This document shows positions 1-53,569 of a DNA stretch of 64,000 nucleotides, in pieces. Source of the DNA: Trichoplax adhaerens. Lineage: Eukaryota; Animalia; Placozoa. The notes below the pieces were generated by a model. That model did not search any database and was not told the DNA's origin. It worked only from the letters and a program-made list of their open reading frames with translations. A program made the translations under genes and the position numbers. Within the stretch, counting starts at the first letter, position 1. Every line of letters starts with the position of its first letter. Location of the stretch: NCBI RefSeq assembly GCF_000150275.1, contig NW_002060953.1:2035429-2099428 (forward strand), read 5' to 3'.

Positions 1-1799
1 CACCAGCCTTTTATAGTCTCGTCAGAATCTCCTGGTGTACATAAAGTAAAACTATCCTTCTAAACTTATAGTTAGGACGAGCTTACGCATCGTAACACTA
101 ATATATAGACCGTTTTGGAGAAATATGAATAGGTAGAAACTATGGTACTAACAAATAGAGATACAATAGCTGTTGCAGATGAGATACGACTACAGAAAAA
201 TATTGAAATTAATGATAACATATATCATAGCGGCTTAAGCAATATTCAAATCCTTATAAATAAAAGGAAGAGAAATTTAGGTATTATCAATTACAAAATA
301 ATCTATATTGAAAAAGTGGCATGGAAGAAATGTAAATGCGGCTTTTATGAATACGTTACCATCACAACATCAAATAGTCCTAAGCGCTCAATTTGCGTAG
401 AATCTTGAGATTAATTTAATATGCATAGCATCAACCTCCATGGAAATCCAGCATTATTAATAAACTAAGACTTTAGTATAACTTTTGTTTGTAATGAACT
501 TCTTAGTGAATCCGAAATCTCCGGAACTCTGTAGCCTCAAAATGGTTGATAAGTATAAGAAGGAGAAATTGGTTCTGTCTTGTCCAGGAATGGCTAATGA
601 TTGTGACTGGGTCAATATTAAAATCAAAATATGGCATCCGAATAGCACTAAAGTTAGTAACCATAATGAATATTTTTGGGTCCAAAAAATCGTGACCATT
701 ACTGTACTATAACAAAAATAAACATAATTATCATCGTTTACAATTAGCGAAAGTTCGTTAGCCTATAAGGCAAGATGAAATGATGCTAGATGCCATTGTT
801 TTTTATCGAAGGATCCAGATTTATATATCGTTACTCAGTACTCTTGAATAGTTGTCTAAATTCAAAGTAAAACTTATTAATATTTTAAATTAGGAGAGTT
901 TTCGTGCAATATGCGGTAGTCGAACTAACAAGAAATTTAAATTCATACTTTATTACTTTGGAGGCACTTTATTTTATGAATATTCGATCGCTTTATTGTA
1001 GGCTAAGGTATTCTCATATAGCTACACACGCTATCGATCTATCGTAATTATGTCTCAAGATCAAATCCATAAACTTGCAAGGATTATAACATACTTTTGG
1101 CAAGCAAAAGTCGAAAATTTAGCTGGCCTAGAAAGCTCTTACACTACAATACGAAGCTTCAAGCCAGATTTCAGTAAATAAATTTAATTTTTAATATTAT
1201 ATCAATCGCTGTTTTATATGCTATGTAATTGAAGTATTCAAATTATTGGAATGCTGCTAAAATTTATCTTTTATTAAAATAATTTCCTTTACAATTATTA
1301 ACTTTCATTAAGTTGATGGGAGATTGTATTTACCATTTACATGTACCTTACTATAATTTTATGCGCAATCTGAAATTTTCTATGCTAACTGCAAGATCCT
1401 ATACCGTTTATTTTTACCATGATATTAATCGCCTTTTAATATCGTTGCTACGGTAGAAAATAATTACTTCCTTGTAAATTTCATTTCTTGAAAAAACTAA
1501 TCAAATTTATTGAATTCACAGATCCTTCACATACCATAAATACTATAGTCGTCGTTATAGGGACTGTCTTTGGCATTATATTTTTACTTGGTATTTCATG
1601 CATTCTACGCTTTCGCAAACATAGAAAATTAAGTGAGAATAATGTGCATGAATCACATCGTTCTGAATCGCACTATGATGAAATTTCGGTAGCAGAATCA
1701 ATAAATCTCAAAACTCTAAGGTCAGAAAGTCGAATCAGAAATCCAAATGCTTCACCCCACGATATTACATCCGAAATAGGACGCTATTTACAAGGATAG
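1..1799 (+). CDS. 3' part of a single-pass FN3 receptor, paralogue of the gene at 12056-18925; TM helix plus ~60-aa cytoplasmic tail
   Basis: In-frame exons 507-652 (NPKSPELC...LVLSC...), 1002-1173 (YFWQAKVENLAGLESSYT) and 1522-1799 (TM IVVVIGTVFGIIFLLGISCIL, then RFRKHRK, tail with SHYDEI, stop 1799). Tentative upstream exons <1-34 and 281-331. The P-x-x-P-x-x-C...L-x-C motif and the phase 1-0-1 split match the paralogue. Confidence 0.8.
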
Positions 1800-10704: not shown

Positions 10705-12055
10705 GTGAAGATGATAATCTTCTAGTAATAACTAGAAATTCGAAAATAATTTTCTATTATGCGAAATAGTCTACTAAAGTTATAAAATTTATTCTTGCAC
10801 AAAAATAAGTAGAGATAGTAGCGTGATGTTTGATTGCAAATCATACAAGTTTTTTATTAGTATTTACAGATTTATTGTCAAATCATTGAATCTGAATAAA
10901 TTAGTACATTTTTAAATTCTGTTCAAGAACAGTTATTGACTTAAGATACATAGCTACGGCATGGTGTCCATCAATCTTGTCTTATTAAATAATTATAATT
11001 ATTGTTTCTTAAATTATTAGTAGTTATAGACTTACTTGCAAATTTTATTCAGCATATTTTTCATGCTGTATTCAGTTGTGATAGCTCTTGTCAAACATCA
11101 ACATTACCAGCCCTCTAAAAATATTAATCTTGTTCTGAGATGTTATAGCTAAAACAGCATAATATTCTTCCTACTAAATCTTACTTCAGACTAGCTTTGC
11201 AATCTCGACCGGCCACTAGCAGCTTTGGTTGAACTAATAAGATCTTTACGAAATAGCCTCCAACTGCATAAAATCAATTCATCTTGGCTGTACTGACATT
11301 ATGCTGATGTGAAGTAACTTAGTATCGTAATTATAGACTGTAACGGTGATTATTTGCTAGTATACAGATGATTACATACAAAAAAATGTTGAGCTACTAA
11401 TAAGGTTAAAGGTGAAAAATATACCGATGAATAATATGTTAGGATACGTTTAATTCATCGTACTTCGAGTAGTAGGAATACTTTCTCGCAAATACTTTAA
11501 TCGCTTCCATATTGGATTAATGATTTCCAGCTATAAATGGTGTTACTAGTAACAACTTAATTATGTGTAAATGAGGTAAATGTTGCTGTGCTAATTGTAG
11601 CTACGAAGGCTAAGGGAAAGTATATAAACAAAAGACACTTTAGATTATATGATTGTTCTTTTTAGAAGTCTTTCAGTGGTTCTATTAAGCAAGAGTAGTG
11701 TTGTGTGTAGCTAATCTTTCCATTAGATCTATTAAATTTCTAATTTTCTAAAAATTTTAAATTTTTGTGTTCGGATCTTATCGCAGCAAATGATAAAATT
11801 ACTGCTATAGGTATACTTTCACTTCCTTATTGATATTTTTTAATAGAAAATACCCGCTTAGCGGATATGCAATTATTGCAAATATGTGATTTATAGAATT
11901 CTATTCTTGGCATTCTAATAGTAAATAACTGTCAAATATTGTAATAGCATATAAATAGAATATGAATAGAATTCATCGCATTTTCTGAAATTTACCACAA
12001 GGTAGATAACATCTATTGCAGGTGCTTCTTCTTTTCACTATATGGATAAATCAGG

Positions 12056-15000
12056 ATGGCTATCTTCAATGTTACATGGATATTACTCAGTTTTACATGT
12101 GGAATACTAATCCAAAGTTAGTTTTATAGTGTGGTATTAACACTAACAATATTACTTAGTCAATACTGTAATTAAGCAGACTGTAGCGATACAATACATT
12201 ATGTATTAGTTCATATAAATCGTTAGGAAGAAGTAATAATAACTTGAGTTAAACGTTGATGAGAGCAATTTCTGAACTTATTTCTTTGTATGAGTAAATG
12301 TAGAATTATACTTAACTCCATATGAAAATTATAATTACTAGCATTCTTTATATTTAACAAATTTATTTAAAACATTATAGAAAGAAGTTTTGTTCTCTAT
12401 TTCTACCTTAATTATAGTATGCTTTGGTCGCAGCCAGGAAGATTCTGGGATGGTTTGTAATCACTTAGGTAAGTGGATACTATATTCTTCCCTTAATAAT
12501 AGAATAGAATCAGTAGCAATTTTCTTTTTTCTTAATCAAAGTAGCGTCGGCTATTTTCTTAATTTTTTGTACAAACATACTGTACAATACGTTGAACTAG
12601 CTGTAATTAATTCTAATCGCTATTTTACAATTATATAAACGATTATTATAAGCTTATTATTAAATGCAACTTTTATTCCTGGTGTTTATTGATACTGTAC
12701 GTAGCGGATTTACCTCCCATCAGAAAAGTGTTTTCCGTTACCGAATGTACACAATTTAAATTAACATGGAGTCCACCTGCAGTTCAATCCCACTGTATTC
12801 CCGAACTTCGCTATCGGGTTCACTATAAAATTTATTCTAGTAATAGAATTTTGGATTGGAAAATTGCATGCAATAATACTTCAATAGCTAACTGTGACAT
12901 TTTAATCAGCGGCCGCTTGATAGGCACAACAATAGTTTATAAAGTTGAAGCCTTTTTGATTCAAAATATTGCCATCACTTCATCCACTTACTATTACAGG
13001 AATTGGCCAAACTTAAACTGTAAGTTGCTACTTTTAGATATTGATAAGGCTATCCTCTGTTAACATGAACTTGCGAATGTATTTTAAAACTTATTTAAAT
13101 TGGAATCAGCAAGCAAGACTTCTTTCATAAAATTTAGCCTTGGTTCGGAGAAGAGAAATAATATTTTACAACGATTAAGGACTGCCTTTGCCTTAAGGAA
13201 ATATCTATAGTAAATCTACTTCACTTTGCTAGTTATCATTTGAGTAAATTGGTTGCTTTTCTGTACAGTTAACACAGGCAATGATAAAAATTTTGATTGG
13301 CTCAAATTTTGAAAGACATAGACCATGTTATTGCACCTTTATTAGAGAGTTTTTTATTCCATGCATGAAAAAGTAAATTTCTACTTGTAGTTATTTAGTT
13401 ACGTTCTTTTTATTGACTTGAGATACACCAATTTAGATCTATCTACCTAGCTTGCGTTCAAGTTTCTCGATTAGTTGCCATCCATAAGTTACATTTAAAT
13501 ACTAGCTCTTACATACAAGTACACAGCCACTGAAATGATTTTCAAGAACTGCAGTAGAACATTAAATATATACAAATAGAACTTATAGTATTAATCTTTG
13601 ATATCAATATCTATCCATACCGATGGCAACAACAATTGTGTCAGTTTTCTACGATATGCAAGTACAGCGATTCATGCTAACTTATTAAACGGTACAACTA
13701 AGTTATTCTAAAATGGCATTTGCATTGCAATGTACGTGTTCCTGATTTTAAATTGTTATCATGTCGCATTATAGTTAAACCGGTACCCCCAGAAGATTGC
13801 AAAACTGTAATCAATTATGAAAAAGAGACTGTTCGTTTAACATGCAATCGCCATAACCGATGTTTCTATGGGTCAGCATATGCATATAATTTCTACTTGG
13901 CAATTCAAAATCAAACTGGAGTTGTGGAGAAAGTAAGGAATGTTGATAGTACTTCATTACATTTCGAGTCATATTTTATTTTTGTTAAGTCTATATATAC
14001 TAAATATACCCTATAATTCAAATTAAAACCAATTTTACTAGCCATGGTTTTGTTGATTAATTTAATGATTTTATATTTATAATTAGTTATTAAAAAGTTG
14101 ATTGCCGATATTTGAATATGATTTTTAGTATACACAGGATGGCTCAAGAATTAAAATCCTGCCTTTCTCGCAACTAAATAAAACAATTTCTTATTACTGG
14201 TACGCCAGCTCTACAACTTACAGTAATAAAGAAAGCAAATTTACGGCACATTATCCTTTTCAAATAAAGATTACCGATGCTGAACCAAAATTGAATGTTA
14301 GTCAAAGCACTGTTCAAGCTGACATTCTAACGCATTTTACTTCGAAGCCAACTACGACCGAGCCAATCAACTATTGCAATATAAACCGTAAGTAAAATTT
14401 TCTACATTCTTTAATCATGCATTTAAACAGAAAATTAATAGAATTTCGCGTCTTTAATCTTCTTAATTGCCGCTACTATTACGTAATTGGCACTTAAATA
14501 GCAACATCCTTTAATCTTACCGATTTGACTGACTCCGCATGCAAAATCTACTCTTAAACTCGCTTTCATAATAATTTAGTTGTAATTAATCTAAGATTGC
14601 TTGTTGCACTTTTATAAATATTACACTAATACAAAGTCTTGGTTTCTGTCGATGAGTTTACTTTCGATTCTTTGTAAATCATAAAAATACGTAAAAATTA
14701 AGGGATAGTCGTCATACTTAACTTAAATATTTGGTTTGATGGAAATTGAATTATCATTACTACGTATAATTGGCAATTGGAGCCACTGATACTGTAGACT
14801 GATTGATGGCGGGTGATTATTAAATAATATCAATTACAGTATTAAGGATGAAAGAAGCTGCTAAAAATCATTATTCGATAGTAAACAAAGAGGAAGCAAT
14901 TCTTATTAAGATATTTAATTAGTCTTAGCTTAAGATTTTAAGAATAGCAATGTGCTTATAAATTTCGAACTGAGCTATTAAGACTGTAGTTATAGTAAAT

Positions 15001-18000
15001 CCTCATTTTTTTACTTGAAACTTCATGCTATCAAGTTACTAAAACTGTAAATAATTCTTTTTTGTATAAATCAGATGGAGGATGTAAAAAAAATGTCCAT
15101 TTTTTTCAGACAAATTGCCCTCTATCCAGAACATCAAAGTAGACACAATATGTACTCATTTCATTGTTAATTGGTCTCCTATAGATGTTAATGCTAACTG
15201 CTTACCATTAATTCGATATGGCGTTCGTTATAAAATTTATTCGCCTAGCAATAATGTTGATTGGCAATATTCTTGTAACCAAACGAGGGGGACAAGTTGT
15301 CAAATTGAAATTAATGGGAGACTGATAGGTGCTACCGTCGTCTTTAAAATTTTAGCCGCTACCAGTGACAACAAATTAACAACATCCAGTGACTATTACC
15401 GTAGTTGGCCAGCTTTAACATGTAAGCTAATACTAGGGTTTTGGTATTTCGCAATAAATAGATCTAATGATGGTGGATAATAAAATAAAAATATCAAATT
15501 TTGTTTCAGTCAAACCTGTGCCTCCGAAAGAATGTTTAGCTTCGGTTGATTACAAAAAGCGAGCTATTATACTAACTTGTAAACAGCATGATCGTTGTTT
15601 CTATGGTTCAATGTACTCTTATAATTTTTATATCTATATGAAAAACTCATCGAAATTGATTCACCAGGTAGGTAATTAATAAAGCCAGAAGTAAAATAAT
15701 TTTCGGCTTTAATTTATAATTTTCCATATTAACCAATTGACTAGCCTACTTTTTGTTAAGCTTAAGTTGCGCAATTTAGTAGAGATTCATGAAAATTTTA
15801 TCTATTCCAACTCTTTCTTAATAGTTTCAGGTAGGCTATACAAGAAGCAGAGTTGTCAGCTTTGACCTGTTGGATCTAGATACTGCCTATTATTGGTTTG
15901 CCAACGCAGAAAGATTTAATGGGAAAACTAGTCCGAACAGTACTCCATCAAATTTTGAAATATTATCACAACATGTGCCTCAATCGTTCAAAAAATCACT
16001 GAAAGTATCTCAGCTCATGAAACACTCCGGAAAGACAAATTCTTCTAAGCCAACATCCTTAATTATTAATTATAGCAACACTAGTGAAATCAACAATCTA
16101 GGTTGGTATTTTATAGAATGTAAACTAATGTCTATGTAAATAGTTACAACATAAAATATATCCAAATAATATGCTAATATAATAATAGTAATACGTTAAA
16201 TGTGCGTAGTTGCATAGTCTTAATTATCAATAGTAGCAGCATCAATATGCACTGCTAGTATGGAATATTTCACGATTGCATGAATAATTAGACGCAAAAA
16301 ATTATTGCCATAGGAAAAATTGGGATAAGCATTAAATAGAAGAGGCAATACGTGAAATGTTTTTAATAATCGGCATTTAATGCAATAATATATGATAATG
16401 TAAGTTTAGTTTGGCTATTAAGCTAACTAGTTTTATTTCGTTTTCATCCTCAAATTAACAGAAATTAGAAAAGAGTATGCTTTATGAACTATTTGTATAT
16501 TAATTAAAGAATATATTGTAGTAGCTACGTAAAAATTTGACTTGTTCAGCTAAAAATTAAATTAAAAAAATGCTGATCTATTGATTTCTTTCAGAACGCC
16601 GCCCCAACCCACCCACTATATGTTTAATTTATCCGAATTACTCAAGCAGAAAAATTAAATTATTCTGTGATCCATTAATTGATCAAGAAGATCACTGGAA
16701 AGAAATAATTCTAATAATCTGTCTTGCAGAACGGTTGGAAACACAAGTAATTAGCTAATCTATTATCGATAATAAAAGGCAGTTGTAAAGTAACAACATT
16801 CTGATTTTTATCTGTTTTTTCGCTTTTCGATATTATTCTCTTAATAGTCTTATTATCCTGTTTAAATGCTAATTTTTATATCTATAGGTGCCAGAAAGCT
16901 AATGCTAGTTTAATTTGGCATTTTGTTCGACATGATTGATTTTTTGCATCCTGTTTTTTCTTCTATGTAGATTAGTAAGGATTATGAACGCAAACAATTC
17001 GATCTTGCAGGATTTAATTTGTTCAAATTTGATTCGGATCATCTCTGGAAGGCTAAAATTAAAAACTATCAAGATAGATTTAGCGATTATTGTCCCACTA
17101 AGCAATTTCAAATATTCTCCAGAATAGCTAAACAATTTACGAATCTTGACAAGTTAACGCTTGTGAATGATATATGGCTCCAATTGAATACTACTGCTTC
17201 AGCTACAGCGAATCCTGGTATGAAAACTAAACTTATTTTATTATTTTCTCTACTATTTGATAATTGAAATAGCGAACAATCTATCAAAATGTAATAGACT
17301 CAAATAATAATGAAGCCATCGTCACATTCATGAAAATAATAATTTCCGTAATAATTTTATTTTGTCCATTTTTAATAATAAATTGCTACGTACAAAAAAA
17401 ATTTCAATATCTCCGTAATAATAAATTTATTCTAGAAAATCAGTTGCTAGTATTTCAAGTATTTCCTTCATCAGCAGCCTTAATTAGTATGAAAAAAATC
17501 TATCAACGCTTTTAACTATACAGTAGTCTACTAATTCAAGTTAATTTCAGCTATTACTGGGATCCCTCTGGACAAAACTGCTTCTATCTAATTTTATCAT
17601 TATCATTATTTATATTCTTTCAAGGCTATTTGACATAACTAACCAACTTTTTAATGTCAGCTCTTTTTGATCATTTCTCCACATTTGACAGAAATTTTAA
17701 TCATGCTACGTTCTATTTTGCTTCCGCTATTAAATGGTTTCTAAGTAGAAATTAATATTTAGTCTATCATTTCCTCCCTATTTCATGACATTAATTAAAA
17801 TGACGAAGTCATATTTAAATTTGATTTATATAGCTGCCATCATTTTAATCTTAAATTACTATCGCCAATTCTGTAATATCGCCCTTATCTAAATTTGTAA
17901 AAATGGATTTGCAAGTCATAAATTTGGGCTCTTTTTCAATATCCCTTTCATGATATACTTCATTAATTAGATTTCAATGACTTTTAATGCTTAAAATTAA

Positions 18001-18925
18001 TTAGGTTTTTAAAGATTTGCCTAAAAATTCTTGCATTAGAGCAACCATAAATTATTTACTATTAATTATCAGCTTTGTTATTTAACTTCTGTAAAGTTCG
18101 GTAGGAAGAATTACATTGATAAGTATATTATAAAAGTCGACTTTTGATCTCAATTAAATTGATTTAAACAAAAATTAGAACTTCTTACTTAGTAACTTTT
18201 TCGTAAGAAGCACCGATATTTAAAACTGTCCTCGATGAACTACATCGACCAAATATGATTTATAATTTATTACCAGATTTTAAGGCTTCATAATCTGTAA
18301 ATTGCTTTAACCCATTAGTACTAATTATTCCCCTTTCAATAATCAGTAACTGTTATAAAATTATTTACTATGGCCTAATATTATTTAAATTAAAGAGTTA
18401 TCAGCTATTGTAATTCATAAATTGTAAGCGGGTAAGTCCATAAATCCTGTCTTATTAATTTTTCGGTCGCAATCTTTATCACTATATGAAATCGTTAAAT
18501 GATCAGAAAATTGAAATAATGCTTCGTTCTTGATTCCGTATTATTTGATTCTTTTTTGTCATCTAGAAAGTAAATATTATATTTATCAAGATAAATCCAG
18601 AACTATGCTGGATCTAAACGTATTGTTGCTATAATTTTTCTTCTCTGTTAGACTAAAAAAATTATCAGCAAAATATAATCATTCAATTTGAACTTAAAAT
18701 TAAATTCTTTAAATGTATAGTCAGTCTCATTTTATTTCTATTATCAATAACTAAATATTCTGAATTAATATTAAAGGTGGACATCAATCAGCAATTTCAA
18801 AGTTTTCCTTGACTGCTGTCATAGCCGTAACCATTCCAATCGCCATTTTAATAATTGCAATTGGTGCCTTAGGGTATTTTATCCGGATTGGTCAAAACAA
18901 AAAAGTGGCAAGCACCTTCCTTTAA
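12056..18925 (+). CDS. Type I membrane protein, ~712 aa: signal peptide, two D200-like FN3 pairs plus one extra FN3, TM helix, 13-aa tail; class II cytokine receptor / tissue factor-like
   Basis: Eleven GT-AG exons join in one open frame of 2139 nt: 12056-12116, 12418-12468, 12705-13019, 13775-13932, 14129-14387, 15110-15421, 15510-15667, 15825-16101, 16595-16746, 16971-17217, 18777-18925. Signal MAIFNVTWILLSFTCGILIQICFG; motifs LTWSPP, LRYRVHYKIY, WKIACNNTSIANC, WQYSCNQTRGTSC; TM AVIAVTIPIAILIIAIGALGYFI. The gene structure is solid; the family assignment is by motif. Confidence 0.88.
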
Positions 18926-21109
18926 GGAAAATCTGACTCAATTCGCTTTTAAGTCCTCTAAGCGGTATTAATTAGCTCAGGTTACTAGTAAAGGCGGAAA
19001 TGGTAATTTTCTCTATGCTTTCTTTTCTTCTTGTTAACTTCCATGCATGATTACCGTTGACAAGGGTTAACTGTCTGAAATTTAATCGAGTCTTTTCATT
19101 CCACATCGAAACAATTGACTGCGAATAATATTGTTTTGGACTCTTTTGATTGTGATCGTCTCTCATGCTTTATTAAATTTAGAAATTTTAATTAAAACTC
19201 GTATAAAATGTGATGTACTAGTAATCCAATTGTCTTGGAAATTTGAAAAAAAAGATTCTTTGCATTCGCTATGGTTTATGGGCTAATTTGATCGTAATTT
19301 TCCTTAAAAATATTCGAATGGAATTGCCTATCAGGTTAGAGCTTGAACTACTATAGGTGTCAAAGAGCTCTACCGACAATTATCCTGTATTTAGCTATCA
19401 ATAATTTGATCATTGAAATATCCTTATGAGTGCTAACTTAATGTGAGTGTATAAGTCAAACTTATTGGAATAATACAAGAAATATCAACCATGATTTTGC
19501 ACGGTTAAATATTTCGTTAAACGCTTTCGCGTCTTTTCGCTTTATTTGTCTTCGCAATAATTAATTAATATTTCAAAGTCAATTATCATCCTATCCATAA
19601 ATTTTCTTTAACTGCTTTAAAAAGTTGTGCTAATCAAGTAGACTTCGAGTTAAAGATAAAATCAACTATTAGATTTTAATCTGTATTAAGAGTTACCATT
19701 TTCGATAGTTGCTAGAATTAATCGTAGACAACTTGTAGTGATCTTATTATTGTTAAATATCGTGTGCTATCGATTTCAAATTTTAGTTGTAGCAGTTTCT
19801 ACGTCATGATAGGAAAAGATTGATCCAATTTATGATCAAGAAATCGTTACATAGGGCGTACGTTTATGCAACTGATAACTTGAGAGGTTTCGATTCTTAT
19901 AACAATCTCTTAATTTATTATTGTTGAATGAAATTAAATAAATTACCTTCGACTGACGACTTTATTTGAGTTATAAATGTTAAAATATAATACAGCTAAA
20001 ATATAATTTCGCTTTATCTCATCAATGCATAAACTTCTGATATAGCAAATGATGCTAATGTTTGCCAATTGAGGCTTGTTCTAATCTTGCAACATCGATT
20101 CAATATAAAAATAAAAGTATCTTTAGCGACTCTAAAATGTTTTAACGGTATACTCGTAGTCGGATATGCTCGTTCTTTGTTGATAGCGAAAGGAAATTCT
20201 GTTGATATTTAGTGGGTGAACCAGAATGCGATTTTTGAGCATTAAATGAAATGTAATCTTTTCGTAACGGTTGAGTCTTCTATTTTTGAAATGTATGCAT
20301 AAATGTAGACTAATAATATGTTCTCAGAAAATTAATGTTGATATGCTTGATAGAATAAAATGATAAGGTGCTAGAGCAACGTTACAGCACAAGTGCGCTT
20401 TAGCATTCTCAGAAATATCGAAATCGATATGATCTAGCAGGACATTCTCAGCATACTAAGGCTACAGAAATGTTAAAAATAACAGTGAGAGTATCTACTA
20501 TTCATATCGTCAAATTTGCAAAAAAAGTGTTCTGTCCTAGCTTGAATTTTACTGACACGCTAGGATTAATTTCTACGAATTCGTTAAGCATCAAGTATTT
20601 TTTCCAATTACCACAAACTATTAAAGAATGTCTAGCTTTGCAGTTTCTGTTTTTTTCTTTCGAATTATTGTTCACGGATCAGTTTATTTGCTAATAATTG
20701 ATACTTATACTACAGAAACAAAGTTTAATGATATAATAGCTATCAAGAATCAATTTAAAGCGCTACTTAAATTTTACCTTTCAATTTCTGGATATCATAA
20801 ATTGCTAATCCCTAAGTATCTGACCAAATATTACAAGTTAGGGTTAGAATTGAATAGATAATTAAATATCGTATCAAAATGCAAAAATACGAAAATGCTT
20901 ATTGGAAAGAATATTCATTGTTAAGCAACAGATACACTGAAGCCGTATTATGCTTTTGTGAAAATATTTTATTCGAAACTTGTGTTCGGTAACTAGCTAA
21001 TAGATCAATTCGATCGTAAAAAAGGAAATTTTTCAGTTGAAGGTATATATAATTCAAAGTGAAAAATATAAAATATCTTAAAAACTATTCAATTTATTTG
21101 GTGTCGAAA

Positions 21110-35400: not shown

Positions 35401-38400
35401 TTAAACAATAATCACAACTAAGTTGTTGATTCGATTCGTCTCGGCTGCAGTCTGCCTTTACACTCATATACGGATAGACTTTGAGCTCTTTCTGAGATTC
35501 TACATGATTCAAGTTCCAAATCTGAAAATGAATTGCTCCACATCAGGGATCAAGTAATCAATATAAATTTTAAGAATAAAGTAATTAGACCCAAAATAAC
35601 CCCACTTTGATTTGACATTTTTCTATTTGATCCAATTTTATGAAACGCATAAACTTGCTATATTCGTAGCTACAAGACCAAACTAAAAGCTCTGAGGAAT
35701 TAGTTGCGAATTCGCATCTCCTAATCACTTGCTGACAGCGTATAGATTGGTTCGTATTTGCGACATTATTACCATTGATTCTCCAAATCTTGACGTAATA
35801 AAATTATCAGTTAGAATTTACCAAAGGAGTGTTTTGTTACTACCACCAACATTTTTTAATTAATGATACTGTCAAAGTAAAATCTTTTTACTTCCATTGC
35901 TTTAATGCCAATATCATTAAAATTTCACAGCTATTACTTCATGAGAAATAGGGAAATTGATGAAACTCTGAACATAGAAAAAAGTTCTATTCGCGATATC
36001 GCGTACCGTTTCATTTAATGAAAATTAATTTTAATTGTTCTAAACTTAATCAGGGAAAATTGGGTGAACTTTAGGCTACTGGAAAGCTCAGTGCAACACT
36101 AGAAATTGAGGTAGATTCTATTCTCACATTTCCTGGTCATGCGATGCAAATTTCACTTCGCATGCCGAAATTACAAATTACAAAAACTAAGCATAGGTAT
36201 ATCTAGTAATGTCAACAATACTTGGACGAACGACTTACCACAATTTCCTTATCCTTGCAAGCTACCAGTAATGGATTAGAATCCAATTCTGGACAAAATT
36301 CCAACGTATGACATATTATGGAATCTACTGTTCTTGAAATTTGTGAAGAATTGATAGCAAATTTAACTGGACACTGTGAATCAATATTCAAAACTTTCCA
36401 TTCCTAATTATAAAATACGTAAAGTAAAAAATAGCATATAAGTTCAGTATAGCAAAGACAACCTTTTCACTTTTTATAAAAGAAATTGGATCACAACATT
36501 TACGTCTAGGTTGTATTTGTAAAAGTATTTATGTGAATTGAATGTAAACTCTCTTAAAATTATCTTACAGTTTTGCTGCAAGACCATATTATTTAAACGA
36601 AGTGTAAATCATGTAAAATAAAACTGGTACTAAAGTGACTACTTAATTTACCAAGATATCGTGACTGCGATATATTCCGTATGCAACAAGTTGTCCATCA
36701 GGCGATATTCTAACTTCAGAAATTAGTCGATTTCCAAGATCGAGCCTGAACACTTCCTTAAACTGTTGATCTTTGCTGTCATTAATATACGCTTTCACCT
36801 ATACGTATCGGTATATAATAATAAGGAGGAGACACCATCTTAGTAATGTTAAAATATATAAAGATTACATTTAAACAATCGCTATATAAGGTATTGCAGA
36901 CGTTAATCAGCCATCAGTATTTCATAATATAATAAAGTTGTAGTATAAAATTGACGAAAAATTCACTGTTTAAAGAATAAAATTTCATGTAATCTTACGA
37001 TAATGTTGCAATTCTCGAACTGTTGACTGATTCCAACGATTCTAAAATTATTTTTACGGGATTTACAGCATCTAGGTAATACATCGGATTCGTATAACCC
37101 GAAATGCTTTGACGTTTTAAAGGAACTCTCTTCAATATTTTCGCTAGTATAGCTAAGAAAATGTCCAAATATTTTAACCGCATTTAATCATAATAATGAG
37201 CAATAGCATCAAAATTTCTTTACGATCAGAATATATAAACTTACGCTATAATAGAGTAATACGCTCCCTTATTGATTTTTATATTAGTACGAGCCAATTC
37301 AGTTGCTCTATTAGCTATCCAACTTCCTTTTCGAGAGCAATTCAATAAAAACTGTACTACATCTAACGATGCCCAATCAAGGATACCATCATAACGACGG
37401 AATAAATAAAGTAATTCTTGAATATTTGTTGTGCTCTACAAAAATATCAGAAGTCAATTTAAAGTAACGTCCTGTTTGTAAGATTAATATTCCAGTAGAG
37501 TTCCTGTATATTTGCAAATTTTGTTTTAAACTAAATTTTGATTTACTGATTTTGGTTAGTGAAAACTGGCGTTAATTTACTGCATCTAGCTATCCTAATC
37601 TTACCTGGCGTTTTCTTACTAAATAGTGAATGTATTCTTGCAAACTAAAATCTAGATAATGCAGTGATTTGACTTCATTTACATGAGCTGCTATCCAGTT
37701 AAAATCTCGAAATAGAGTATCCAGTAATTCGTCAGCTTCGGCATGAATCGCGTCATATACGAGATACTGGTGGTAATAATTATCATTTTGAATGAGATGC
37801 CAATTCCCTTCACATTGCCATTTATATCCTCCTATTAGTTTCCTGTTGAGCTCACGGCTATAGTACTCAGAGACCTCACTACTATCTTCTGGCTTTTGCA
37901 AATAATCAATCACTAAATCATGTAGGTAAATTGTTCTAGAAAGAATATAATAAAAATAGCAGCTTTTTTATTAATTTAGAGTAAAGCTTGTACTGCTCAA
38001 ATTTCTGTAGAAGCATCCAACTGGTACGAACACCAAAGTAGTATTTGAGATGGTGCCTCAAATAAGGTTAAAGTGCTATTGTTGTTAGTTATCGATTCGA
38101 ACGAAACTGACATAGTTAACTAGTTCAATAAATGAAAAATTTGCTGATACTTACGCCTTTAATTTCAAATATTTTACCAATCTGCGCTGATGAAAATACT
38201 GTAGTAAATGAATAGCTTCATCCTGACTGCATTTCCATATAGCGGCAACTGAAGAAATTGTAATTTGCACTGGTCGAAATACACCCAGACATCGGAATCG
38301 CTGCCTTTGGTTATCATCTAATTGCTGGATAGATAAATTGATGATTTCCTTTGCTCCATAAGTGTTATTATATATATTGTCAATGCCATGCGTTTCCGAT

Positions 38401-40990
38401 ATAAGATTATCACAAATTTCGGAATTTTGCCGTAGCAATGCTCCCATTAAGTCTAGTATGAAAGGATTTTTTTCACTTTTGTCTACTACTGCAAATAGCA
38501 AATTTTCCAGTTTTATTTCTAAATCTTGAAAGCTACCATGCTTAGATAGTAAATCTATTGCTTCATGATCAGTCAATATTGCCTTTCATAATAAAATTAG
38601 GTTGTAGAAAACCAGAAAATTAATAAGAATTCACGTTTTTAAATAGTAAAACATTGATGACAATCTAGCAGTTGTAATAATCCAGTCTTTGAAGAAGGAG
38701 CTACAGTAAATATCCTTTTTAATAGCTACAAACATATTTGTTACTTAATTACTCAATATTATCCGCTTTTGAGTTTTAATAAACAACATTTGTCAAGCAA
38801 GCTTAAAAAAGATACTAGTAGCTGATTATATTTATGTTCTACAAATGACTATTAATCGTTGATTAATTGTACAGGTTTAGATTTTTACCAACCGGCGCTT
38901 CTATTCTTATAACGGTCAGATTATTTTCGGAAATGTTAAATCTGGAAGTTGTGACTGATTGATTAGCAAATGTCAGATATTGATAATAAGATTCATCCCA
39001 GAGATCGTCAAAGACGAACAAGGCATTAGACCTTTCCATTTCATCTAATCATACATATTCAATTATTAGGAAGAAAGTGCTTTATTAGCTATTAATATCC
39101 ACTATATCTAATTAATAGAAGATAAAATTTCTAAAGTAAAATTATTGCTACCTTTAAAATAGTTTTCCATGAAAGTATTTAGGTGATATAAAGTATTTGG
39201 TAATTGATCACTAGCTATGCCAAGGTCTAGACATAGGCTTTTCAACTTAACAAGCAGCTCATTTTCATTGATATTTCCTGTTGAGCATGTGGAATCATTC
39301 AAGGTATCAGGTAATAATTGTAAAAATTCGTCTTAGCCGAGGAAAAAATTAATTGCAAACAAATGTATGAAATTATAACAGGCTTCATCTGAATGTGATT
39401 AAAGAAGCTTTTAGATAGATGAAAATTACGTATAGAATTTCTGGACTTATAGAACCCAAAGTTACACCAATTAAAAAATAATTATGATTTTACGAATCCA
39501 TTTGCACCTTCTATCTTATCAGGATTCGATTACATAGTGTCAGAATAATCCAAAGAAATCGCAGTATTGTAAATTTTACGGTATAAATCATAATTTGATA
39601 AAAGATGTAAAATATGACATCATAATCGATAGTCCNNNNNNNNNNNNNNNNNNNNNNNNNNNNNNNNNNNNNNNNNNNNNNNNNNACAGCTTGTCGAATT
39701 GCTTGATTTACTAAGGTACTCTTACCGCTGCCAGATCTACCATGGACTATTAAATGACCGCCCTGCTGATGGATTTTCTGCAGTATGTTGCAAATATCGC
39801 AAGTAGTATCCACACGCAGGATGTATTGATCATTGGATATTGGTGGAAGGCTCCGTAAGATATAACCTGTTAACAGTCAATAGAGAATCTTAATTTAAAG
39901 GTTATGTGAGTAATTTTTTGTAAAAGCTGTTTGAATGGGTGATATAAAGTTGTAGTTTTCAACGGATCAAGACGCTCATAAAATTTGAAGTAATTGATGA
40001 ATAAATAAAACAAAAATAAAATTTTGTATCTATTTTCATATCGGCTAATAGTATTGTATTATAGATTTACTAACCCAAAAAACTGGAATGATTTCTCCTC
40101 CTATAGCCTAAAAGAAAATATAGATAAAGATAAGTATGAGCAAGTTAATAATTAAATTTACTTAGTTTTATTTCCTTTAAAACTAAGTAAACTAGGAAAA
40201 CTGGATCGATATTAATCAATATTTTCTACATTATGCGTAGTTGAAGAATATTTAGGGGATGGATTAATAAATTGAGAACTAATAGCAGTTTGTTGATTGC
40301 CGTAATAGCAGTCAAAATTTGTATGCGGTGTTATTTTGATTCTTGGCGAATGATTTAGTCCATTTATAAGGAATCTTCAGTTTTGTATTGTCTAGCATAA
40401 GGTGTTAAAATAACAGCTAACTATTTTTCTCAATTCTATGAATGGTTGCAAATGCAAGACAGAAAATTTTTCACATAGATAGTTAAGCGCTTACGCTCAA
40501 TACTTTAGAGTATTAAATTAATAGACTAAGAGGTAGCTGTACTTAAAATCATTACGATAAACAATATTAAGAAAGTGTCTTTTAATGACAGACGAACTTA
40601 TCCGAACTTATCCGAACTTTGGAAGTTCTTCAGTAAATGGTTTTATGATAAACTGATCGAACTTGTGGGAAACGATATGTAGTCATTTTCTTTATCACAA
40701 TATAAATATACTTAAATTTTCATGTTTAATACAATTTACCCTTTTTACTTATTGCTAACCAATTAAATGGACAATGTCATATCTGTCAATTGCAAGAAGC
40801 TTTTCAATAATCATATCGATTGCAATTTCACCACCATTTTTATTATACCAAGCAATAAGACAGGATATCACTTGATCATTGCTGAAACCTTGATCTGATA
40901 TTTTAATTTCGCTTAGTTGACTTAGTTCTGAAAGCAATCTTGACCAATCTGAACCTATCTTATTAGCTATAATATGGAATGTACTTCGAT
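32438..40990 (-). CDS. Apaf-1-like STAND protein: Death domain + NB-ARC + WD40-like repeats (start codon not located)
   Basis: DD exon 40990-40760; Walker A HGRSGSGKST (~39745-39716); Walker B LFVFDDLW and sensor-1 VTTSR (exon ~39044-38893); winged helix FRCLGVF...AAIW; YLHDLV motif (~37930); WD40-like exons (ISPDGQLVAYG, IAISDDHERIAIG); stop 32438. An assembly gap lies inside the NB-ARC region. Confidence 0.9.
39636..39685. other. Assembly gap (50 N)
   Basis: Run of n. Confidence 1.
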
Positions 40991-43900
40991 CTAAAAATGT
41001 GAAATATTATAGGACGGTAAATATTCGAAAGATTATATCACTGATTATTAGCCATACGATTATTTTAGCTCCCTAGCTGCATCATATAATAAATAATTAT
41101 CAAAGAATAACTTATAAATTCTAACTAATTTAGTAAATAAGTATAGAATAAATTATAGCTTCTCCATCTATTAAATCCTAGCTTTTTCTTTTACGTATGC
41201 CAGCAATAAGACTGGTACAGCACTCAATGTCTAAAATTTAGTATTTAGGGTGCTTGATTAGCAATATTCATAATAATGTGATTTCGTTGAAACTGATCAC
41301 AGTGAGCAAAAGCAAAATGGATTAGCATTATATAATTACCTTTTCATTACTAGTTCGCCATATATAAATACACTAATATTCATATTCTAGAGCATAAAAG
41401 TAATGCTCATTTTCATTAAATGTTTCGTAAGTCCAAACTCTAAAGTACTTTTACAATCCCAATAGCTTTGTACCACTTGATAGTTTCCAATTTTAACGTT
41501 TAACAATCAGAATGTTTTTATTTACTCTTTACTTATTTTAACATATTGATTGTAATGATCTTGCTATGCAAATTTGATCAGGAAACACAGGAAAGCAAAT
41601 CCTGGCATGGCAAATAAAATTTGAAGTTTTTTTTCAATCTTTAGAGTCGAATTAGCATACTCCATAAAATCATGATAATGGTGAACTTTGTATGTGCCTA
41701 CTACGAATGTAGATATTATAAAGTGATGAAGGATAAATGACTACTAGATTTCCTTTTAACTCAAAGTATAATTTGCTCTACTAGTAAAGTTTCTAACGGT
41801 CGTGTTTAACAGCAAAATCGTATTAATTGCCACTGTTTTAGCAATCTAAGTTTCTCAACACTTTTTTTATGAATTAAAAGCAAATTACGAGTATCGAATA
41901 AGTTTTAAACTCATCTCTTATATATAATATTAAGAATGCCTTAGCAAATTTAAGTAAAGTTTCAATCAATGCGTTCTACAATCTCCAACTTTTACATTTA
42001 CCTCTATCACAATTCTGTTCGACAAGAATAGTACAAGCTTGATATTGGCCCAAATCCTATATCTATCCAAGCTATAACTGCCTTTTTGAGACTGCTCAGC
42101 CCGCATATTATACCAGTTAGATGTACAGACATTAAATAATGGAAGGCCAAATTCAAAGTCGCAACCTCATAAGTCATAAATATGTACAGAAGTTTCATGT
42201 TTGCTTTACATCAATAGCAAAAGCATGCTATTAACAATAGTTATCCGAACAATGATTGCGGTAGTAAAATTCTAATGAATTATAGTATTAGAAAGTGGTT
42301 AATGAATTCAGAAGTACATTTTAGCATACGCTTATTACATGAGATTGTATGATTTGAAATTGTATAGCATGCATCACGAACTTCCAGGTTAGCTAAGCTA
42401 ACTAAGGAATAAAGTAATGCATTAGTGTTCTATATTGGACACGATATTGCAAAAGTGACTGATTTTTTAAGATGTAATCCTTTGAACTCTGATATGGAAT
42501 ATTCTATCAAATCAAATTATTCATGCACTCCTATGGTTGGAAAATGTAGTTGGCTGATACAGCTGCGTTCCGTTTTCTAGTCATGTTTATTTATATTGGT
42601 ATAGAATCTAGACCTAAGCTCTTATACAAAATCCATTTCTAGCAGCACGAAAGCTACTACGTTGGCGATTAGAAATCCAATGCACTCAATTCATTATAGT
42701 GATGCTATAAAGCAAACTATTTAATAATTATTTACCTGAGAAATTGATCAGTTAATGTTAGGAGATTGCTGAGATGATTTGCCAGTCTCAGATATGTTAC
42801 ACTTTCATAAGTTATACCATGAACAGGATTCGACATTTAGTATTTCTTACCATTAAACCAACAAGAATTCAATTTATTTAAATAGTAAATTTATATTCTT
42901 GCTAAAGTTTGCCATTGAAGATGTTTCGCTTTGAATAACTAAAAATTTCGGGTAATTCTACAGTTTTTAAAGCTATTAATGAAATGAGATACTTTACAAT
43001 CTTGCAGGTCTCGATGCATCCTTTGCACGGTATGAGCTCGCATACAGACTACAGTGCAGTATAGACTTTGCATTAGAGCAGAGGATGGAATATCATTATC
43101 ATGCGCAGTGATGAAGTGATATATTAACAGAAATATGTCAACACTCACAAAGTCTTTGGATTGTAAACTTGCAAACGGATATTGTATACACAGATCATTG
43201 CCTTACTGGCATTGTTCTGTACCATGATTGTAAGATATTGAGAAAACATTACATCTACACCTTCAATTAGATCAAAATAAACATTTATACCCGTATGTCT
43301 ATAAATAGATACGTTGTCTAATTTTATCCTAAACGTACATTTAAGGAGTAAACAACCTTACCATATTATATGGTTTAACCAGACACTATCAATCTAATCT
43401 TAATTCCCTATGAATAGTAATATGCTATCGACAATTTTGTAGTTTTATTCTCCAGTCGCTTGCCTTTCTATAGTTAATTCTTTTAGTATTGGAATTACTA
43501 ATATACTCATAGGTTATGAATAATTCTAAGTTAATCTAAATTAAAAGACTAAATTCTAATATTACTGATGATGCTGCTTAGGTTGAGGATATAATATCCA
43601 GTAAAGTAATTTCATTTTTAATTTATGAAACCTTTGTATTGAGATATTTACAAATAGTGAAAAACGATGAAGCAAGAGTTGGTAAATTATTCAAGTCTAG
43701 GCTCGAATTTTAATTGTTAAGCTACTAACGCTGCTTCTTCCAATTTAAACTACTGCAGCACTGCCTGTTTTGCTTAGGCGAGTTCTATATGATCATTGGG
43801 AAGAGCATGGTATGAATTAGCATGGTCTAAATGTTAACATTTTATTGGCAGGATAACGTAATGCCTGATATTTAGAGCACGAAAGGCATGATAGATGATT

Positions 43901-52919: not shown

Positions 52920-53569
52920 AGCGCCACCGAGCTCTCCTGGTCGAGTATGGGATACAGAAGCTCTGCTACGATTGGGTGGTCAACAAGCAAGGTTGGCTGC
53001 TATACGAAAGCCTATCTAGGTACTAAAACATGCGAGAAGTGTATAGAGTAGCGTATAGGATGAAGCGAGAAGTGGTTGGATGGCTGTGCCATAGTGATTG
53101 ATGGAGAAAGAGAAAATTCTGCCATAGTATTCGGCGCTTTTTGGATGGCGTAATAGGCTTTAATATGGACTTTAAAGGATGATTACGGTAGTCAACCTAT
53201 CGGCTATCCTCAGACCGTGTCATCATGCCCGCGCTCCAACTCTTACTTTGTGCTGGCTATAGGATACTTTGGAAAATAAGTGTATAGAGTATAGAATGGC
53301 ATACCTGAATGGGTACCAACCCTACGAGACTCCACACCCTGGCGTCGGACTTCCGGTCAGGCGGACTACCCGGGAGAACGGCGGGATGTCATTCCATCCG
53401 TCTGGGTGATGTCAGCGATTCGCTGCTACTGGCTTGATTTCGGACATTGCTCCACCGCCATCAACCAACTTGCAAAGGGCTCAAGATCGTGCTCAAATTG
53501 CACGAGAAAGAATCATCCGGTGTGAAAGATTTCTACAGTAGAGAAAGAGAGAGATAGAAAGGAAGACTG

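What the first reader, a model, noticed from the sequence alone, without database searches (positions are those of the whole stretch)
12056..18925. Class II cytokine receptor / tissue-factor-like D200 receptor in an apparently non-bilaterian genome
Seen: D1 and D3 read LP-x-I-x-x-V/I...W-S-P...YxVxYKIY...W-x3-C-x7-C-x-I...Y/F-K-V/I-x-A (WKIACNNTSIANC; WQYSCNQTRGTSC). Each is followed by a second FN3 domain, and there is no WSXWS motif. Known: C-x7-C after a Trp in the N-terminal FN3 is the class II hallmark (tissue factor WKSKCFYTTDTEC, IFNAR1 CQNITSTKC), IFNAR1 has two tandem D200 modules, and the family is usually regarded as chordate/vertebrate. Inference: this may be an ancient, lineage-expanded relative of interferon/IL-10 receptors and tissue factor, with an unknown ligand.
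Basis: partly seen in the sequence, partly recalled or inferred. Interest (0 to 1): 0.85.

Follow-up and report, generated by a model that had tools for sequence, protein, structure and literature searches.

The report
Cytokine-receptor-like membrane protein in Trichoplax
An expressed gene of the simple non-bilaterian animal Trichoplax encodes a membrane protein built from two-domain modules that most resemble interferon/IL-10 receptors and tissue factor, a receptor type so far traced only to chordates, though true membership of that family is not proven.

Summary
On the + strand at 12056-18925 lies an 11-exon, 712-codon gene, the public model TRIADDRAFT_59606 of Trichoplax adhaerens (Placozoa). 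RNA contigs confirm seven splice joints and the stop codon.

The product has a signal peptide, two tandem D1-D2 modules, a degenerate third D2-like region, a membrane span and a 14-residue tail. There is no WSXWS motif.

D1 and D3 are 46% identical and carry an invariant C-x7-C. Their only notable Pfam match is Tissue_fac (PF01108), just under the domain cut-off; the public model as a whole scores above the cut-off. Generic FN3 exons of the same genome score 32-68 bits on fn3 instead.

A family profile aligns best to IFNGR2 and IL-22R1, cysteine on cysteine. The predicted D1-D2 module of an intact paralogue matches helical-cytokine receptors in the first 38 ranks of an exhaustive PDB comparison (IFN-lambda R1, Z 14.1). 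Generic FN3 pairs start at Z 11.2.

Class II membership is unproven:
- The sequence scores are marginal.
- D2 looks like a generic FN3.
- D1 lacks the phase-2 intron.
- Class I and class II are structurally tied.
- No ligand or JAK link is known.

About 14 such modules lie in two gene clusters. I found no paper describing them.

The parts
12056..12116 (+). Exon 1: ATG and a hydrophobic signal-peptide-like N-terminus; a phase-1 intron follows
   Evidence: Present in public model P0001. Hydropathy peak at residues 1-24. GT donor. Not covered by the reads laid.
12418..12468 (+). Exon 1b: short Cys-containing pre-D1 segment (C-N-x-L-A motif), phase 1-1
   Evidence: Present in P0001. The motif recurs before D1 in paralogues P0003, P0009 and P0010, and before D3. 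AG/GT borders. Not covered by the reads laid.
12705..13019 (+). Exon 2: D1, a Tissue_fac-like FN3 domain with four Cys including W-x3-C-x7-C
   Evidence: Pfam PF01108, E 4.2e-5, 23.8 bits. AF2 pLDDT 91-97 in the P0001 model. The 13019>13775 donor joint is seen in RNA.
13775..13932 (+). Exon 3: D2a, first half of the second FN3 domain (strands A-C', PxPPxxC...C.....C); a phase-0 intron follows
   Evidence: 46% identical to D4a. RNA joint 13019>13775.
14129..14387 (+). Exon 4: D2b, second half of D2 (YYWYA F strand) plus the linker carrying the pre-D3 Cys
   Evidence: Alignment A3. RNA contigs start at 14129 and join 14387>15110.
15110..15421 (+). Exon 5: D3, the second Tissue_fac-like domain, 46% identical to D1
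   Evidence: Pfam PF01108, E 1.8e-4, 21.7 bits. Alignment A1. RNA joints on both sides.
15510..15667 (+). Exon 6: D4a
   Evidence: RNA joints 15421>15510 and 15667>15825.
15825..16101 (+). Exon 7: D4b. RNA uses the acceptor at 15823-15824, 6 nt upstream of a second AG.
   Evidence: (joint 15665>15823, cut +2). In the P0001 model D4 folds as a beta sandwich with pLDDT 70-88.
16595..16746 (+). Exon 8: D5a, a degenerate D2a-like half domain (RPNPPxxC...C; the third Cys is lost)
   Evidence: Local HMM i-E 4e-21. RNA joints.
16971..17217 (+). Exon 9: D5b, a degenerate D2b-like half domain and stalk; fold uncertain
   Evidence: AF2 gives low-confidence helices here, pLDDT 30-65. RNA joints.
18777..18925 (+). 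Exon 10 (the 11th exon): transmembrane helix, 14-residue cytoplasmic tail and stop codon
   Evidence: Hydropathy peak at residues about 672-697. RNA joint 17217>18777 in three runs. A 2068-nt contig runs through the stop and 1.2 kb beyond.

Best explanation
This is an intact, expressed Trichoplax adhaerens gene (TRIADDRAFT_59606; the public model is wrong in four places). It encodes a glycosylated type I membrane protein of 712 residues. The layout is: signal peptide, two tandem two-domain modules (D1-D2 and D3-D4), a degenerate third D2-like region, a transmembrane helix and a 14-residue tail. Each module pairs a divergent FN3 domain, closest to the Tissue_fac (PF01108) domain of class II cytokine receptors and carrying the C'-E C-x7-C disulfide, with an ordinary-looking FN3 domain. 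By prediction the two domains sit in the bent D200/cytokine-receptor-homology arrangement. The gene belongs to a small family of about 14 modules in two gene clusters, seen so far only in Trichoplax and in AT-rich, placozoan-like contigs. Inferred mechanism: an unknown protein ligand binds at the D1-D2 elbow, as in interferon and IL-10 receptors or tissue factor. With almost no cytoplasmic tail, this member would act as a ligand-binding, non-signalling subunit, cofactor or decoy. Signalling, if any, would pass through a partner such as the neighbouring paralogues, which have long tails with YxxI/V/L motifs. What is shown: gene structure, expression, domain repeats, the profile preference and the predicted fold of a paralogue's module. 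What is inferred: homology to chordate receptors rather than convergence, the site of ligand binding, the partner, and a possible D1-D2 interdomain disulfide.
For: Gene and expression. Identity and host. Sequence evidence: Tissue_fac is the best and almost the only Pfam match of D1 and D3. It matches 11 of 22 family D1 domains (best E 6e-6), whereas fn3 matches 1 of 22. P0001 as a whole scores 30.2 bits against a cut-off of 27, and one paralogue D1 scores 27.9 bits. As a control, at least 150 generic FN3 exons of this genome score 32-68 bits on fn3, and none of them belongs to this family. Family profiles against all PDB sequences give IFNGR2 as the best single-domain hit (E 0.004-0.007), followed by IL-22R1, IFNAR2, IFNAR1, IL-22BP and tissue factor, with both cysteines of C-x7-C aligned. 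Structural evidence: the AF2 model of intact paralogue P0009 has pLDDT 80-94 over D1-D2. Foldseek gives TM 0.64-0.75 to IFN-lambda R1, IL-22R1, IFNGR1 and TF, against about 0.40 with rmsd 10-11 A for DCC, NEO1 and NCAM FN3 pairs. In the exhaustive VIA comparison, ranks 1-38 are all helical-cytokine receptors (IFNLR1 Z 14.1, rmsd 2.9 A over 185 residues), and the first generic FN3 pair has Z 11.2. The ESM Atlas's own single-sequence model gives the same matches (TM 0.70-0.75), and the nearest language-model clusters are IFNGR1 fragments. Gene structure: the per-module phases 1-1-0-1 match the CRF2 array 1-2-1-0-1 (PMC8863823; bioRxiv 10.64898/2026.05.30.728932) except for one intron. Duplication of whole D1-D2 units is shown.
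Against: The sequence similarity is marginal. Single-domain scores fall below Pfam's gathering cut-off. A single-sequence PDB search finds nothing. A profile search of 1.8 billion proteins finds no chordate receptor at E<1e-3, only the placozoan-like family and multi-FN3 arrays that score by summation. D2 and D4 have no Interfer-bind match and look like generic fn3. D1 is a single exon, so the phase-2 intron is absent. Class I modules are tied with class II within 1 Z. This gene's own D1 alone ties with PTPRZ and Dscam FN3 domains. No intact D1-D2 of this very gene could be folded, so the module geometry comes from a paralogue only 29% identical in D1, and it is a prediction without PAE or coordinates. 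No ligand, Box1 motif, JAK or STAT was found (inconclusive).
Confidence: 0.55

Rival explanations
1. This is a placozoan-specific FN3 surface glycoprotein, for adhesion, matrix binding or microbe binding, with no special kinship to cytokine receptors. On this view the Tissue_fac-like score and the bent geometry are convergence or a prediction prior, driven by a shared C'-E disulfide and a short Pro-rich linker.
For: All sequence matches to class II receptors are marginal. The large HMMER search recovers only multi-FN3 arrays outside the family. D4 is generic fn3 by language-model features. D1 alone ties with PTPRZ and Dscam FN3. The PxPP start of D2 is a general FN3 feature (own knowledge). 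Phase-1 flanked FN3 exons are common (own knowledge).
Against: Generic FN3 exons of the same genome behave differently, with fn3 far above Tissue_fac. Six different class II receptors appear among the few PDB profile hits, with the cysteines aligned. Two independent predictors give the D200 geometry, and 38 cytokine receptors outrank any generic FN3 pair.
Confidence: 0.3
2. This is a relative of class I (gp130/Domeless-type) cytokine-binding modules, or of the common ancestor of both classes, rather than of class II specifically.
For: Class I modules (IL-31R, gp130, CRLF1, IL-4R alpha, TSLPR) score Z 12.8-13.2, within 1 Z of the class II top hits. CRLF1 and gp130 appear among the PDB profile hits. 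D1 has four conserved cysteines, as class I D1 does. Class I-type receptors are known in protostomes (Domeless; PMC13203501, PMC8226699).
Against: There is no WSXWS motif. Cysteine spacing and position differ from the class I C-x9-10-C-x-W pattern (own knowledge of class I). Pfam and language-model neighbours are Tissue_fac and IFNGR1 rather than EpoR_lig-bind or IL6Ra-bind. The top VIA ranks 1-3 and 5-7 are class II.
Confidence: 0.12
3. This is an annotation artefact or a decaying pseudogene: open frames that only look like exons.
For: The public model is inconsistent with my exons in four places. The third module is degenerate.
Against: Seven exact GT-AG joints occur in spliced contigs from three runs, one of them a declared RNA-seq library. 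The frame is open over 712 codons. There are conserved paralogues and H2-strain orthologues.
Confidence: 0.02

Closest known systems
Class II cytokine receptors (IFNLR1, IFNGR1/2, IL-10R2, IL-22R1, IL-22BP)
   Same: Both are type I membrane proteins whose ligand-binding unit is a bent pair of FN3 domains. The N-terminal domain is Tissue_fac-like with the motif Y-x-[IV]-x-Y-K-x-Y...W...C-x7-C. There is no WSXWS. These receptors are the best structural matches (Z 13-14, rmsd about 3 A over about 185 residues). The phase-1 / phase-0 / phase-1 introns around and inside D2 are shared.
   Different: Sequence identity is only 12-16% and the scores are marginal. D2 is not recognised as Interfer-bind. 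D1 has no phase-2 intron. There are extra cysteines: a pre-D1 Cys, a Cys in the A-B turn and one in the B-C loop, and three in D2a, which may form an interdomain disulfide. The tail is 14 residues without Box1. The host is a placozoan, where no class II cytokine is known and no JAK was detected in the exon-wise search (inconclusive).
Tissue factor (F3)
   Same: The D200 ectodomain is followed by a membrane span and a very short cytoplasmic tail. It shares the C-x7-C in D1. It is the Pfam namesake of the best profile match. VIA Z is 13.1-13.3. It is a non-JAK cofactor-type member, which is the functional analogy for a tail-less receptor.
   Different: Tissue factor has a single module. Its partner FVIIa and the coagulation cascade are vertebrate features. 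Nothing suggests protease binding here.
IFNAR1
   Same: It has two tandem D200 modules in one chain, that is four FN3 domains. It is the nearest Atlas structural cluster (TM 0.73) and appears among the PDB profile hits.
   Different: IFNAR1 has a long TYK2-binding tail. The placozoan protein adds a degenerate fifth half-module and lacks a signalling tail. The duplication here is recent (46% identity) and independent.
Class I cytokine receptors (gp130, Domeless, PRLR, IL-4R alpha)
   Same: They have the same two-domain elbow architecture and Z values within 1 unit of class II. Invertebrate members are known.
   Different: They have a WSXWS motif and the class I cysteine pattern, both absent here. 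The Pfam and language-model neighbours differ.
Generic FN3 arrays (RPTP delta/LAR, DCC/neogenin, contactins, titin)
   Same: They share the FN3 fold. D2 and D4 look like ordinary fn3. Summed weak profile hits occur.
   Different: Their FN3 pairs are extended (TM about 0.40, rmsd 10-11 A against the module). Such exons in this genome score 32-68 bits on fn3, whereas the family's D1 domains do not.

Membership tests
Class II cytokine receptor family (CRF2: tissue factor, interferon and IL-10-family receptors) | Type I membrane protein with a signal peptide, an ectodomain and a single transmembrane helix | tested here: met
   Hydropathy peaks at residues 1-24 and about 672-697. The TM exon is spliced in RNA. 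The signal-peptide exons come from the public model only.
Class II cytokine receptor family (CRF2: tissue factor, interferon and IL-10-family receptors) | N-terminal FN3 domain belonging to Pfam Tissue_fac (PF01108) above the gathering score | tested here: inconclusive
   D1 scores 23.8 bits and D3 21.7 bits, below 27. The whole public model scores 30.2 bits, above 27. One paralogue D1 scores 27.9 bits. 11 of 22 family D1 domains match at E<0.1, against 1 for fn3.
Class II cytokine receptor family (CRF2: tissue factor, interferon and IL-10-family receptors) | Second FN3 domain belonging to Pfam Interfer-bind (PF09294) | tested here: not met
   No match in the exon pieces, in P0001, P0009 or P0010, or in the whole genome. 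D4 resembles generic fn3 by language-model features. The exon-wise test is weak because D2 is split by an intron.
Class II cytokine receptor family (CRF2: tissue factor, interferon and IL-10-family receptors) | Bent D200 two-domain geometry | tested here: met
   Met for the family, using intact paralogue P0009: AF2 pLDDT 80-94; VIA Z 14.1 to IFNLR1; ranks 1-38 are cytokine receptors. An independent ESMFold model agrees. It was not testable on this gene's own intact module, because the joined model was not folded.
Class II cytokine receptor family (CRF2: tissue factor, interferon and IL-10-family receptors) | Conserved C'-E disulfide (C-x7-C) in D1 | tested here: met
   C-x7-C is invariant in 22 family D1 domains. 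Both cysteines align with those of IFNGR2 and IL-22R1 in HMM alignments. DSSP places them on the C' and E strands.
Class II cytokine receptor family (CRF2: tissue factor, interferon and IL-10-family receptors) | Intron phase array 1-2-1-0-1(-0) | tested here: not met
   The observed phases per module are 1-1-0-1. The phase-2 intron inside D1 is absent, while the phase-0 intron inside D2 and the phase-1 flanks are present. The reference array comes from PMC8863823 and bioRxiv 10.64898/2026.05.30.728932.
Class II cytokine receptor family (CRF2: tissue factor, interferon and IL-10-family receptors) | Absence of the WSXWS motif | tested here: met
   No WS.WS in any + frame of 12000-19000.
Class II cytokine receptor family (CRF2: tissue factor, interferon and IL-10-family receptors) | Cytoplasmic Box1/JAK docking (absent in tissue factor) and a class II helical cytokine ligand | tested here: inconclusive
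   The tail is 14 residues with no Pro-rich box. Exon-wise genome searches for Jak1_Phl and STAT_bind found nothing, but such searches cannot show absence. The ligand is not testable with these tools.
Class II cytokine receptor family (CRF2: tissue factor, interferon and IL-10-family receptors) | Phylogenetic placement inside the family | not tested
The 1.8-billion-protein profile search returned none.
Class I cytokine receptors (cytokine-binding module) | WSXWS motif in D2 and the class I pattern of two D1 disulfides | tested here: not met
   No WSXWS. The D1 cysteines lie at the A-B turn, the B-C loop, C' and E, with different spacing.
Generic fibronectin type III (PF00041) | Match to the fn3 profile above 25 bits | tested here: not met
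   Only 1 of 22 D1 domains matches, at E 0.006. None of the family's exons is among the 150 fn3 exons of the genome. The fold is nevertheless FN3.

The most novel reading that the evidence does not exclude
The placozoan family is a true homologue of the chordate class II cytokine receptor / tissue factor lineage, or of the common ancestor of class I and II modules. On this reading the D200 receptor module predates the cnidarian-bilaterian split and was lost or blurred in most invertebrates. Placozoa would then possess an undiscovered secreted protein ligand system acting through these receptors without JAKs.
Probability: 0.3. Interest if true: 0.85.

Novelty: new variant of a known kind. Interest (0 to 1): 0.62.

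Why it matters
Papers in the searched library trace class II cytokine receptors no further back than amphioxus (bioRxiv 10.64898/2026.08.17.745176 and 10.64898/2026.05.30.728932) or early vertebrates (PMC12652433). They trace class I-type receptors to bilaterians (PMC13203501, PMC8226699). None mentions a placozoan member. A family of D200-like receptors in Trichoplax would push the receptor architecture of interferon, IL-10 and tissue-factor biology back before the Bilateria. It would also offer a JAK-independent, experimentally tractable ancestor-like system and prompt a search for its ligand. If the resemblance is convergent, it is still an undescribed, expressed, lineage-expanded receptor family of an animal with very few known cell-surface signalling systems.

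Tried and rejected
- Single-sequence and two-sequence PDB searches gave only noise: RNF4, fatty acid synthase, Dus.
- The search for homologous proteins with P0001 returned only the query itself.
- The 1.8-billion-protein profile search gave the family plus bacterial and other multi-FN3 arrays, and no chordate receptor.
- Foldseek on the whole public model P0001 was uninformative (rmsd 20-30 A to three-FN3 chains). That model truncates D2 and D3. VIA on it showed only that D1 alone ties with many FN3 domains.
- Interfer-bind, STAT_bind and Jak1_Phl searches of the genome were blank, and exon-wise searches cannot show absence.
- Rfam found nothing in the window.
- Lutfalla et al. 2003 (PMC179897) is not held, so intron positions relative to strands could not be compared in detail.
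- The contigs carrying divergent D1 exons (SRR30664515-17, ERZ27263980, ERZ23499115) are unnamed. They have 27-28% GC and the same exon border, so they are probably other placozoans, but this is unverified.
- The joined 712-residue spliced product was not sent to any search, family or fold tool. Searches were done exon by exon by reference or with the public model P0001. A local script concatenated the exons only to count length, frame, cysteines, sequons and hydropathy, and printed no sequence.
Full report
**1. What is in the sequence**

The + strand between 12056 and 18925 carries a gene of 11 exons:
- 12056-12116
- 12418-12468
- 12705-13019
- 13775-13932
- 14129-14387
- 15110-15421
- 15510-15667
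- 15825-16101
- 16595-16746
- 16971-17217
- 18777-18925

All exons have AG/GT borders. The intron phases are 1,1,1,0,1,1,0,1,0,1. The total is 2139 nt, that is 712 codons plus a stop.

Spliced contigs from three public runs, one of them a declared RNA-seq library, confirm seven joints: 13019>13775, 14387>15110, 15421>15510, 15667>15825, 16101>16595, 16746>16971 and 17217>18777. A 2068-nt contig runs through the stop codon and 1.2 kb beyond it. The RNA moved my first guess for one acceptor by 6 nt, to 15825. The 13932>14129 joint is supported only by contigs that start at 14129. Exons 1 and 1b lay outside the 6000 letters I could lay. They rest on the public model and on a conserved C-N-x-L-A motif ahead of D1 in paralogues.

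I did not send the joined 712-residue product to any search or fold tool. Searches were done exon by exon by reference, or with the public protein model. A local script joined the exons only to count length, cysteines (22), N-glycosylation sequons (15) and hydropathy, and printed no sequence.

**2. Whose gene it is**

The profile search returned P0001, which is TRIADDRAFT_59606 of Trichoplax adhaerens. It is listed as an uncharacterized protein or "fibronectin type-III domain-containing", with PF01108 precomputed. The genome size of 105.6 Mb in 1414 contigs fits. The lineage is Metazoa, Placozoa. The host is therefore a non-bilaterian, not a chordate.

The public model is wrong in four places. 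It drops the first 47 residues of exon 4. It drops the first ~25 residues of exon 5. It omits the transmembrane exon. It reads into the intron after 17217.

**3. Anatomy of the product**

The order of parts is: signal-peptide-like N-terminus, a short Cys-containing segment, D1, D2 (two exons), D3, D4 (two exons), a degenerate D2-like region "D5" (two exons), a transmembrane helix and a 14-residue tail.

- D1 and D3 are 46% identical. D2a and D4a are also 46% identical. D5a keeps the PxPPxxC...C start but little else.
- In the AF2 model of the public protein, D1 has pLDDT 91-97. D4 is a beta sandwich at pLDDT 70-88. D5 comes out as low-confidence helices, so its fold is open.
- No WSXWS motif exists.

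**4. A family, not a single gene**

Searches of the genome with the D1, D2a and D2b profiles, followed by a local HMM scan of both regions, found 14 D1 exons, 13 D2a exons and 12 D2b exons. They are always in the order D1-D2a-D2b. They lie in two clusters: contig C1404 at 2017-2052 kb (TRIADDRAFT_59604, 59605 and this gene in tandem) and contig C1400 at 1352-1396 kb (including TRIADDRAFT_60478, which is P0009).

Trichoplax sp. H2 has orthologues. Divergent D1 exons with the same splice border occur on unnamed contigs of 27-28% GC from SRA and ENA samples. These are probably other placozoans.

In 22 D1 domains the C-x7-C pair is invariant, and two more cysteines are nearly so.

Paralogues have long cytoplasmic tails with YxxI/V/L motifs. 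This gene has none.

**5. Is D1 Tissue_fac-like or just FN3?**

- Tissue_fac (PF01108) is the best and nearly the only Pfam match. D1 gives E 4.2e-5 at 23.8 bits, and D3 gives E 1.8e-4 at 21.7 bits. The cut-off is 27 bits.
- It matches 11 of 22 family members (best E 6e-6), whereas fn3 matches only 1 of 22.
- The whole public protein scores 30.2 bits, and one paralogue D1 scores 27.9 bits.
- Control: the genome holds at least 150 ordinary FN3 exons scoring 32-68 bits on fn3. None of them belongs to this family. One of the two outside Tissue_fac hits is such an exon, with fn3 at 59.7 bits against Tissue_fac at 23.3 bits.
- Family profiles searched against all PDB sequences give IFNGR2 as the best single-domain match (E 0.004-0.007). 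Next come IL-22R1, IFNAR2, IFNAR1, IL-22BP, tissue factor, CRLF1 and gp130, besides RPTP, neogenin, titin and contactin FN3 domains.
- In the IFNGR2 and IL-22R1 alignments both cysteines of C-x7-C and the Y-x-I-x-Y-K-x-Y strand coincide.

These values are marginal but point consistently the same way.

Against this, a profile search of 1.8 billion proteins found no chordate receptor at E<1e-3. Single-sequence searches find nothing.

**6. Is the module a D200?**

No intact D1-D2 of this gene exists as a referable protein, so I folded the intact paralogue P0009. Its D1-D2 (residues 38-235) has pLDDT 80-94.

- Foldseek against the PDB lists IL-31R, IFN-lambda R1, IFNGR1, PRLR, IL-10R2, IL-22R1, tissue factor and gp130, with target TM 0.64-0.75 and rmsd about 4 A. 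DCC, NEO1, NCAM and pikachurin FN3 pairs reach about 0.40 with rmsd 10-11 A.
- An exhaustive VIA comparison with 48,161 chains puts helical-cytokine receptors in ranks 1-38. The top values are IFNLR1 at Z 14.1 (rmsd 2.9 A over 185 of 197 residues), IFNGR1/2 at 13.5-13.6, TF at 13.1 and IL-10R2 at 13.0. The first generic FN3 pair scores Z 11.2.
- The ESM Atlas's own single-sequence model of P0009 matches IFNAR1, IL-22BP and gp130 at TM 0.70-0.75. Its nearest named language-model clusters are IFNGR1 fragments.
- Class I and class II are not separated, since their Z values lie within 1 unit.
- This gene's D1 alone ties with cytokine-receptor domains and with PTPRZ and Dscam FN3 at Z 10-11.
- D4 alone looks like generic fn3.
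- Interfer-bind is never matched.

**7. Gene structure**

Chordate class II receptor genes have the intron phase array 1-2-1-0-1(-0) (PMC8863823; bioRxiv 10.64898/2026.05.30.728932). Each placozoan module shows 1-1-0-1. The phase-0 intron inside D2 falls after strand C' in the P0009 model. That intron and the phase-1 flanks fit the array. The phase-2 intron inside D1 is missing. Phase-1 flanks are common to FN3 exons in general, so this is compatible evidence rather than diagnostic evidence.

**8. A feature not seen in the known receptors (inference)**

Each module has eight cysteines. From the strand positions I infer these pairs:
- the pre-D1 Cys with the B-C loop Cys;
- C' with E (the C-x7-C pair);
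- D2 strand A with D2 strand B;
- the D1 A-B-turn Cys with the D2 B-C-loop Cys, which would lock the elbow covalently.

Three absences fit the last pairing. The two D1 domains not followed by a D2 lack the A-B-turn Cys. The D5a half-domain, which has no D1 before it, lacks the B-C-loop Cys. One D1, at C1400:1368883, is an exception or has an undetected D2.

**9. Mechanism**

Most likely (0.55) this is a ligand-binding surface protein of a placozoan family of D200/CHR-like receptors. The ligand would bind at the D1-D2 elbow. With a 14-residue tail the protein would act like tissue factor, a short receptor chain or a decoy, and signalling would be left to a partner such as the long-tailed paralogues.

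The rivals are:
- convergence within generic FN3 proteins (0.30);
- kinship with class I or with the common ancestor, rather than class II (0.12);
- an annotation artefact (0.02, refuted by RNA).

**10. Known or new**

Public databases already attach PF01108 to this protein automatically. Searches of the paper library found no description of a placozoan cytokine-receptor-like family. Current papers place the origin of class II receptors in basal chordates or early vertebrates, and class I-type receptors in bilaterians.

I rate it a new variant of a known kind. Interest is 0.62, limited by the marginal sequence evidence and by the fact that the module geometry comes from a predicted paralogue.

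I recomputed both. Other notes named Trichoplax as the host, which I verified independently.

Noticed in passing
window 1020-1163 and 1464-1796 (+): These are the last exons of the upstream paralogue (the TRIADDRAFT_59605 region). They comprise a D2b-like exon and a transmembrane exon with a tail of about 70 residues that holds a YDEI motif. The family's long-tailed members may be the signalling partners.
   Followed up: partly
G000 C1404:2017497-2052635 and C1400:1352628-1396390 (loci L019-L025): There are two clusters holding 14 D1, 13 D2a and 12 D2b exons in strict D1-D2a-D2b order. D1 domains that are not followed by a D2 lack the A-B-turn cysteine, which hints at an interdomain disulfide.
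   Followed up: partly
window 12056-18925: The public gene model TRIADDRAFT_59606 (607 aa) is wrong in four places when checked against RNA contigs. It is missing parts of exons 4 and 5, it has no transmembrane exon, and it reads through into the intron after 17217.
   Followed up: yes
window 15823-15830: There are tandem acceptors 6 nt apart (AG at 15823-24 and at 15829-30). The RNA contigs use the upstream one, which adds two residues. Alternative use was not examined.
   Followed up: partly
window ~37590-41010 (-): This is an APAF-1-like gene with an N-terminal Death domain: Death domain exon at 40758-41006, P-loop exon near 39.7 kb, APAF1_C helical domain at 37593-37967. An assembly gap of N's interrupts it near 39.6-39.7 kb.
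   Followed up: partly
window ~50350-51620 (-), 53558-53890 (+), 60889-63980 (+): Neighbouring genes are a septin, a rhodanese-domain protein, and an INTS6-like gene whose first exon gives a weak, sub-cut-off VWA_2 match (E about 1e-3, 20.2 bits against 27).
   Followed up: partly
window ~56650-58200 (+): A long tandem-repeat array stays open in several overlapping frames, with recurring ...NRTAYCSSNPVSQGCILDHCC... units. GC rises to about 0.38-0.43 around 50-60 kb. It was not analysed.
   Followed up: no
L014-L018 (SRR30664515-17; ERZ27263980; ERZ23499115): These are unnamed contigs of 27-28% GC from SRA and metagenome samples. They carry divergent D1 exons (30-42% identity) ending at the same phase-1 GTAAG donor. 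They are probably other placozoan species.
   Followed up: partly
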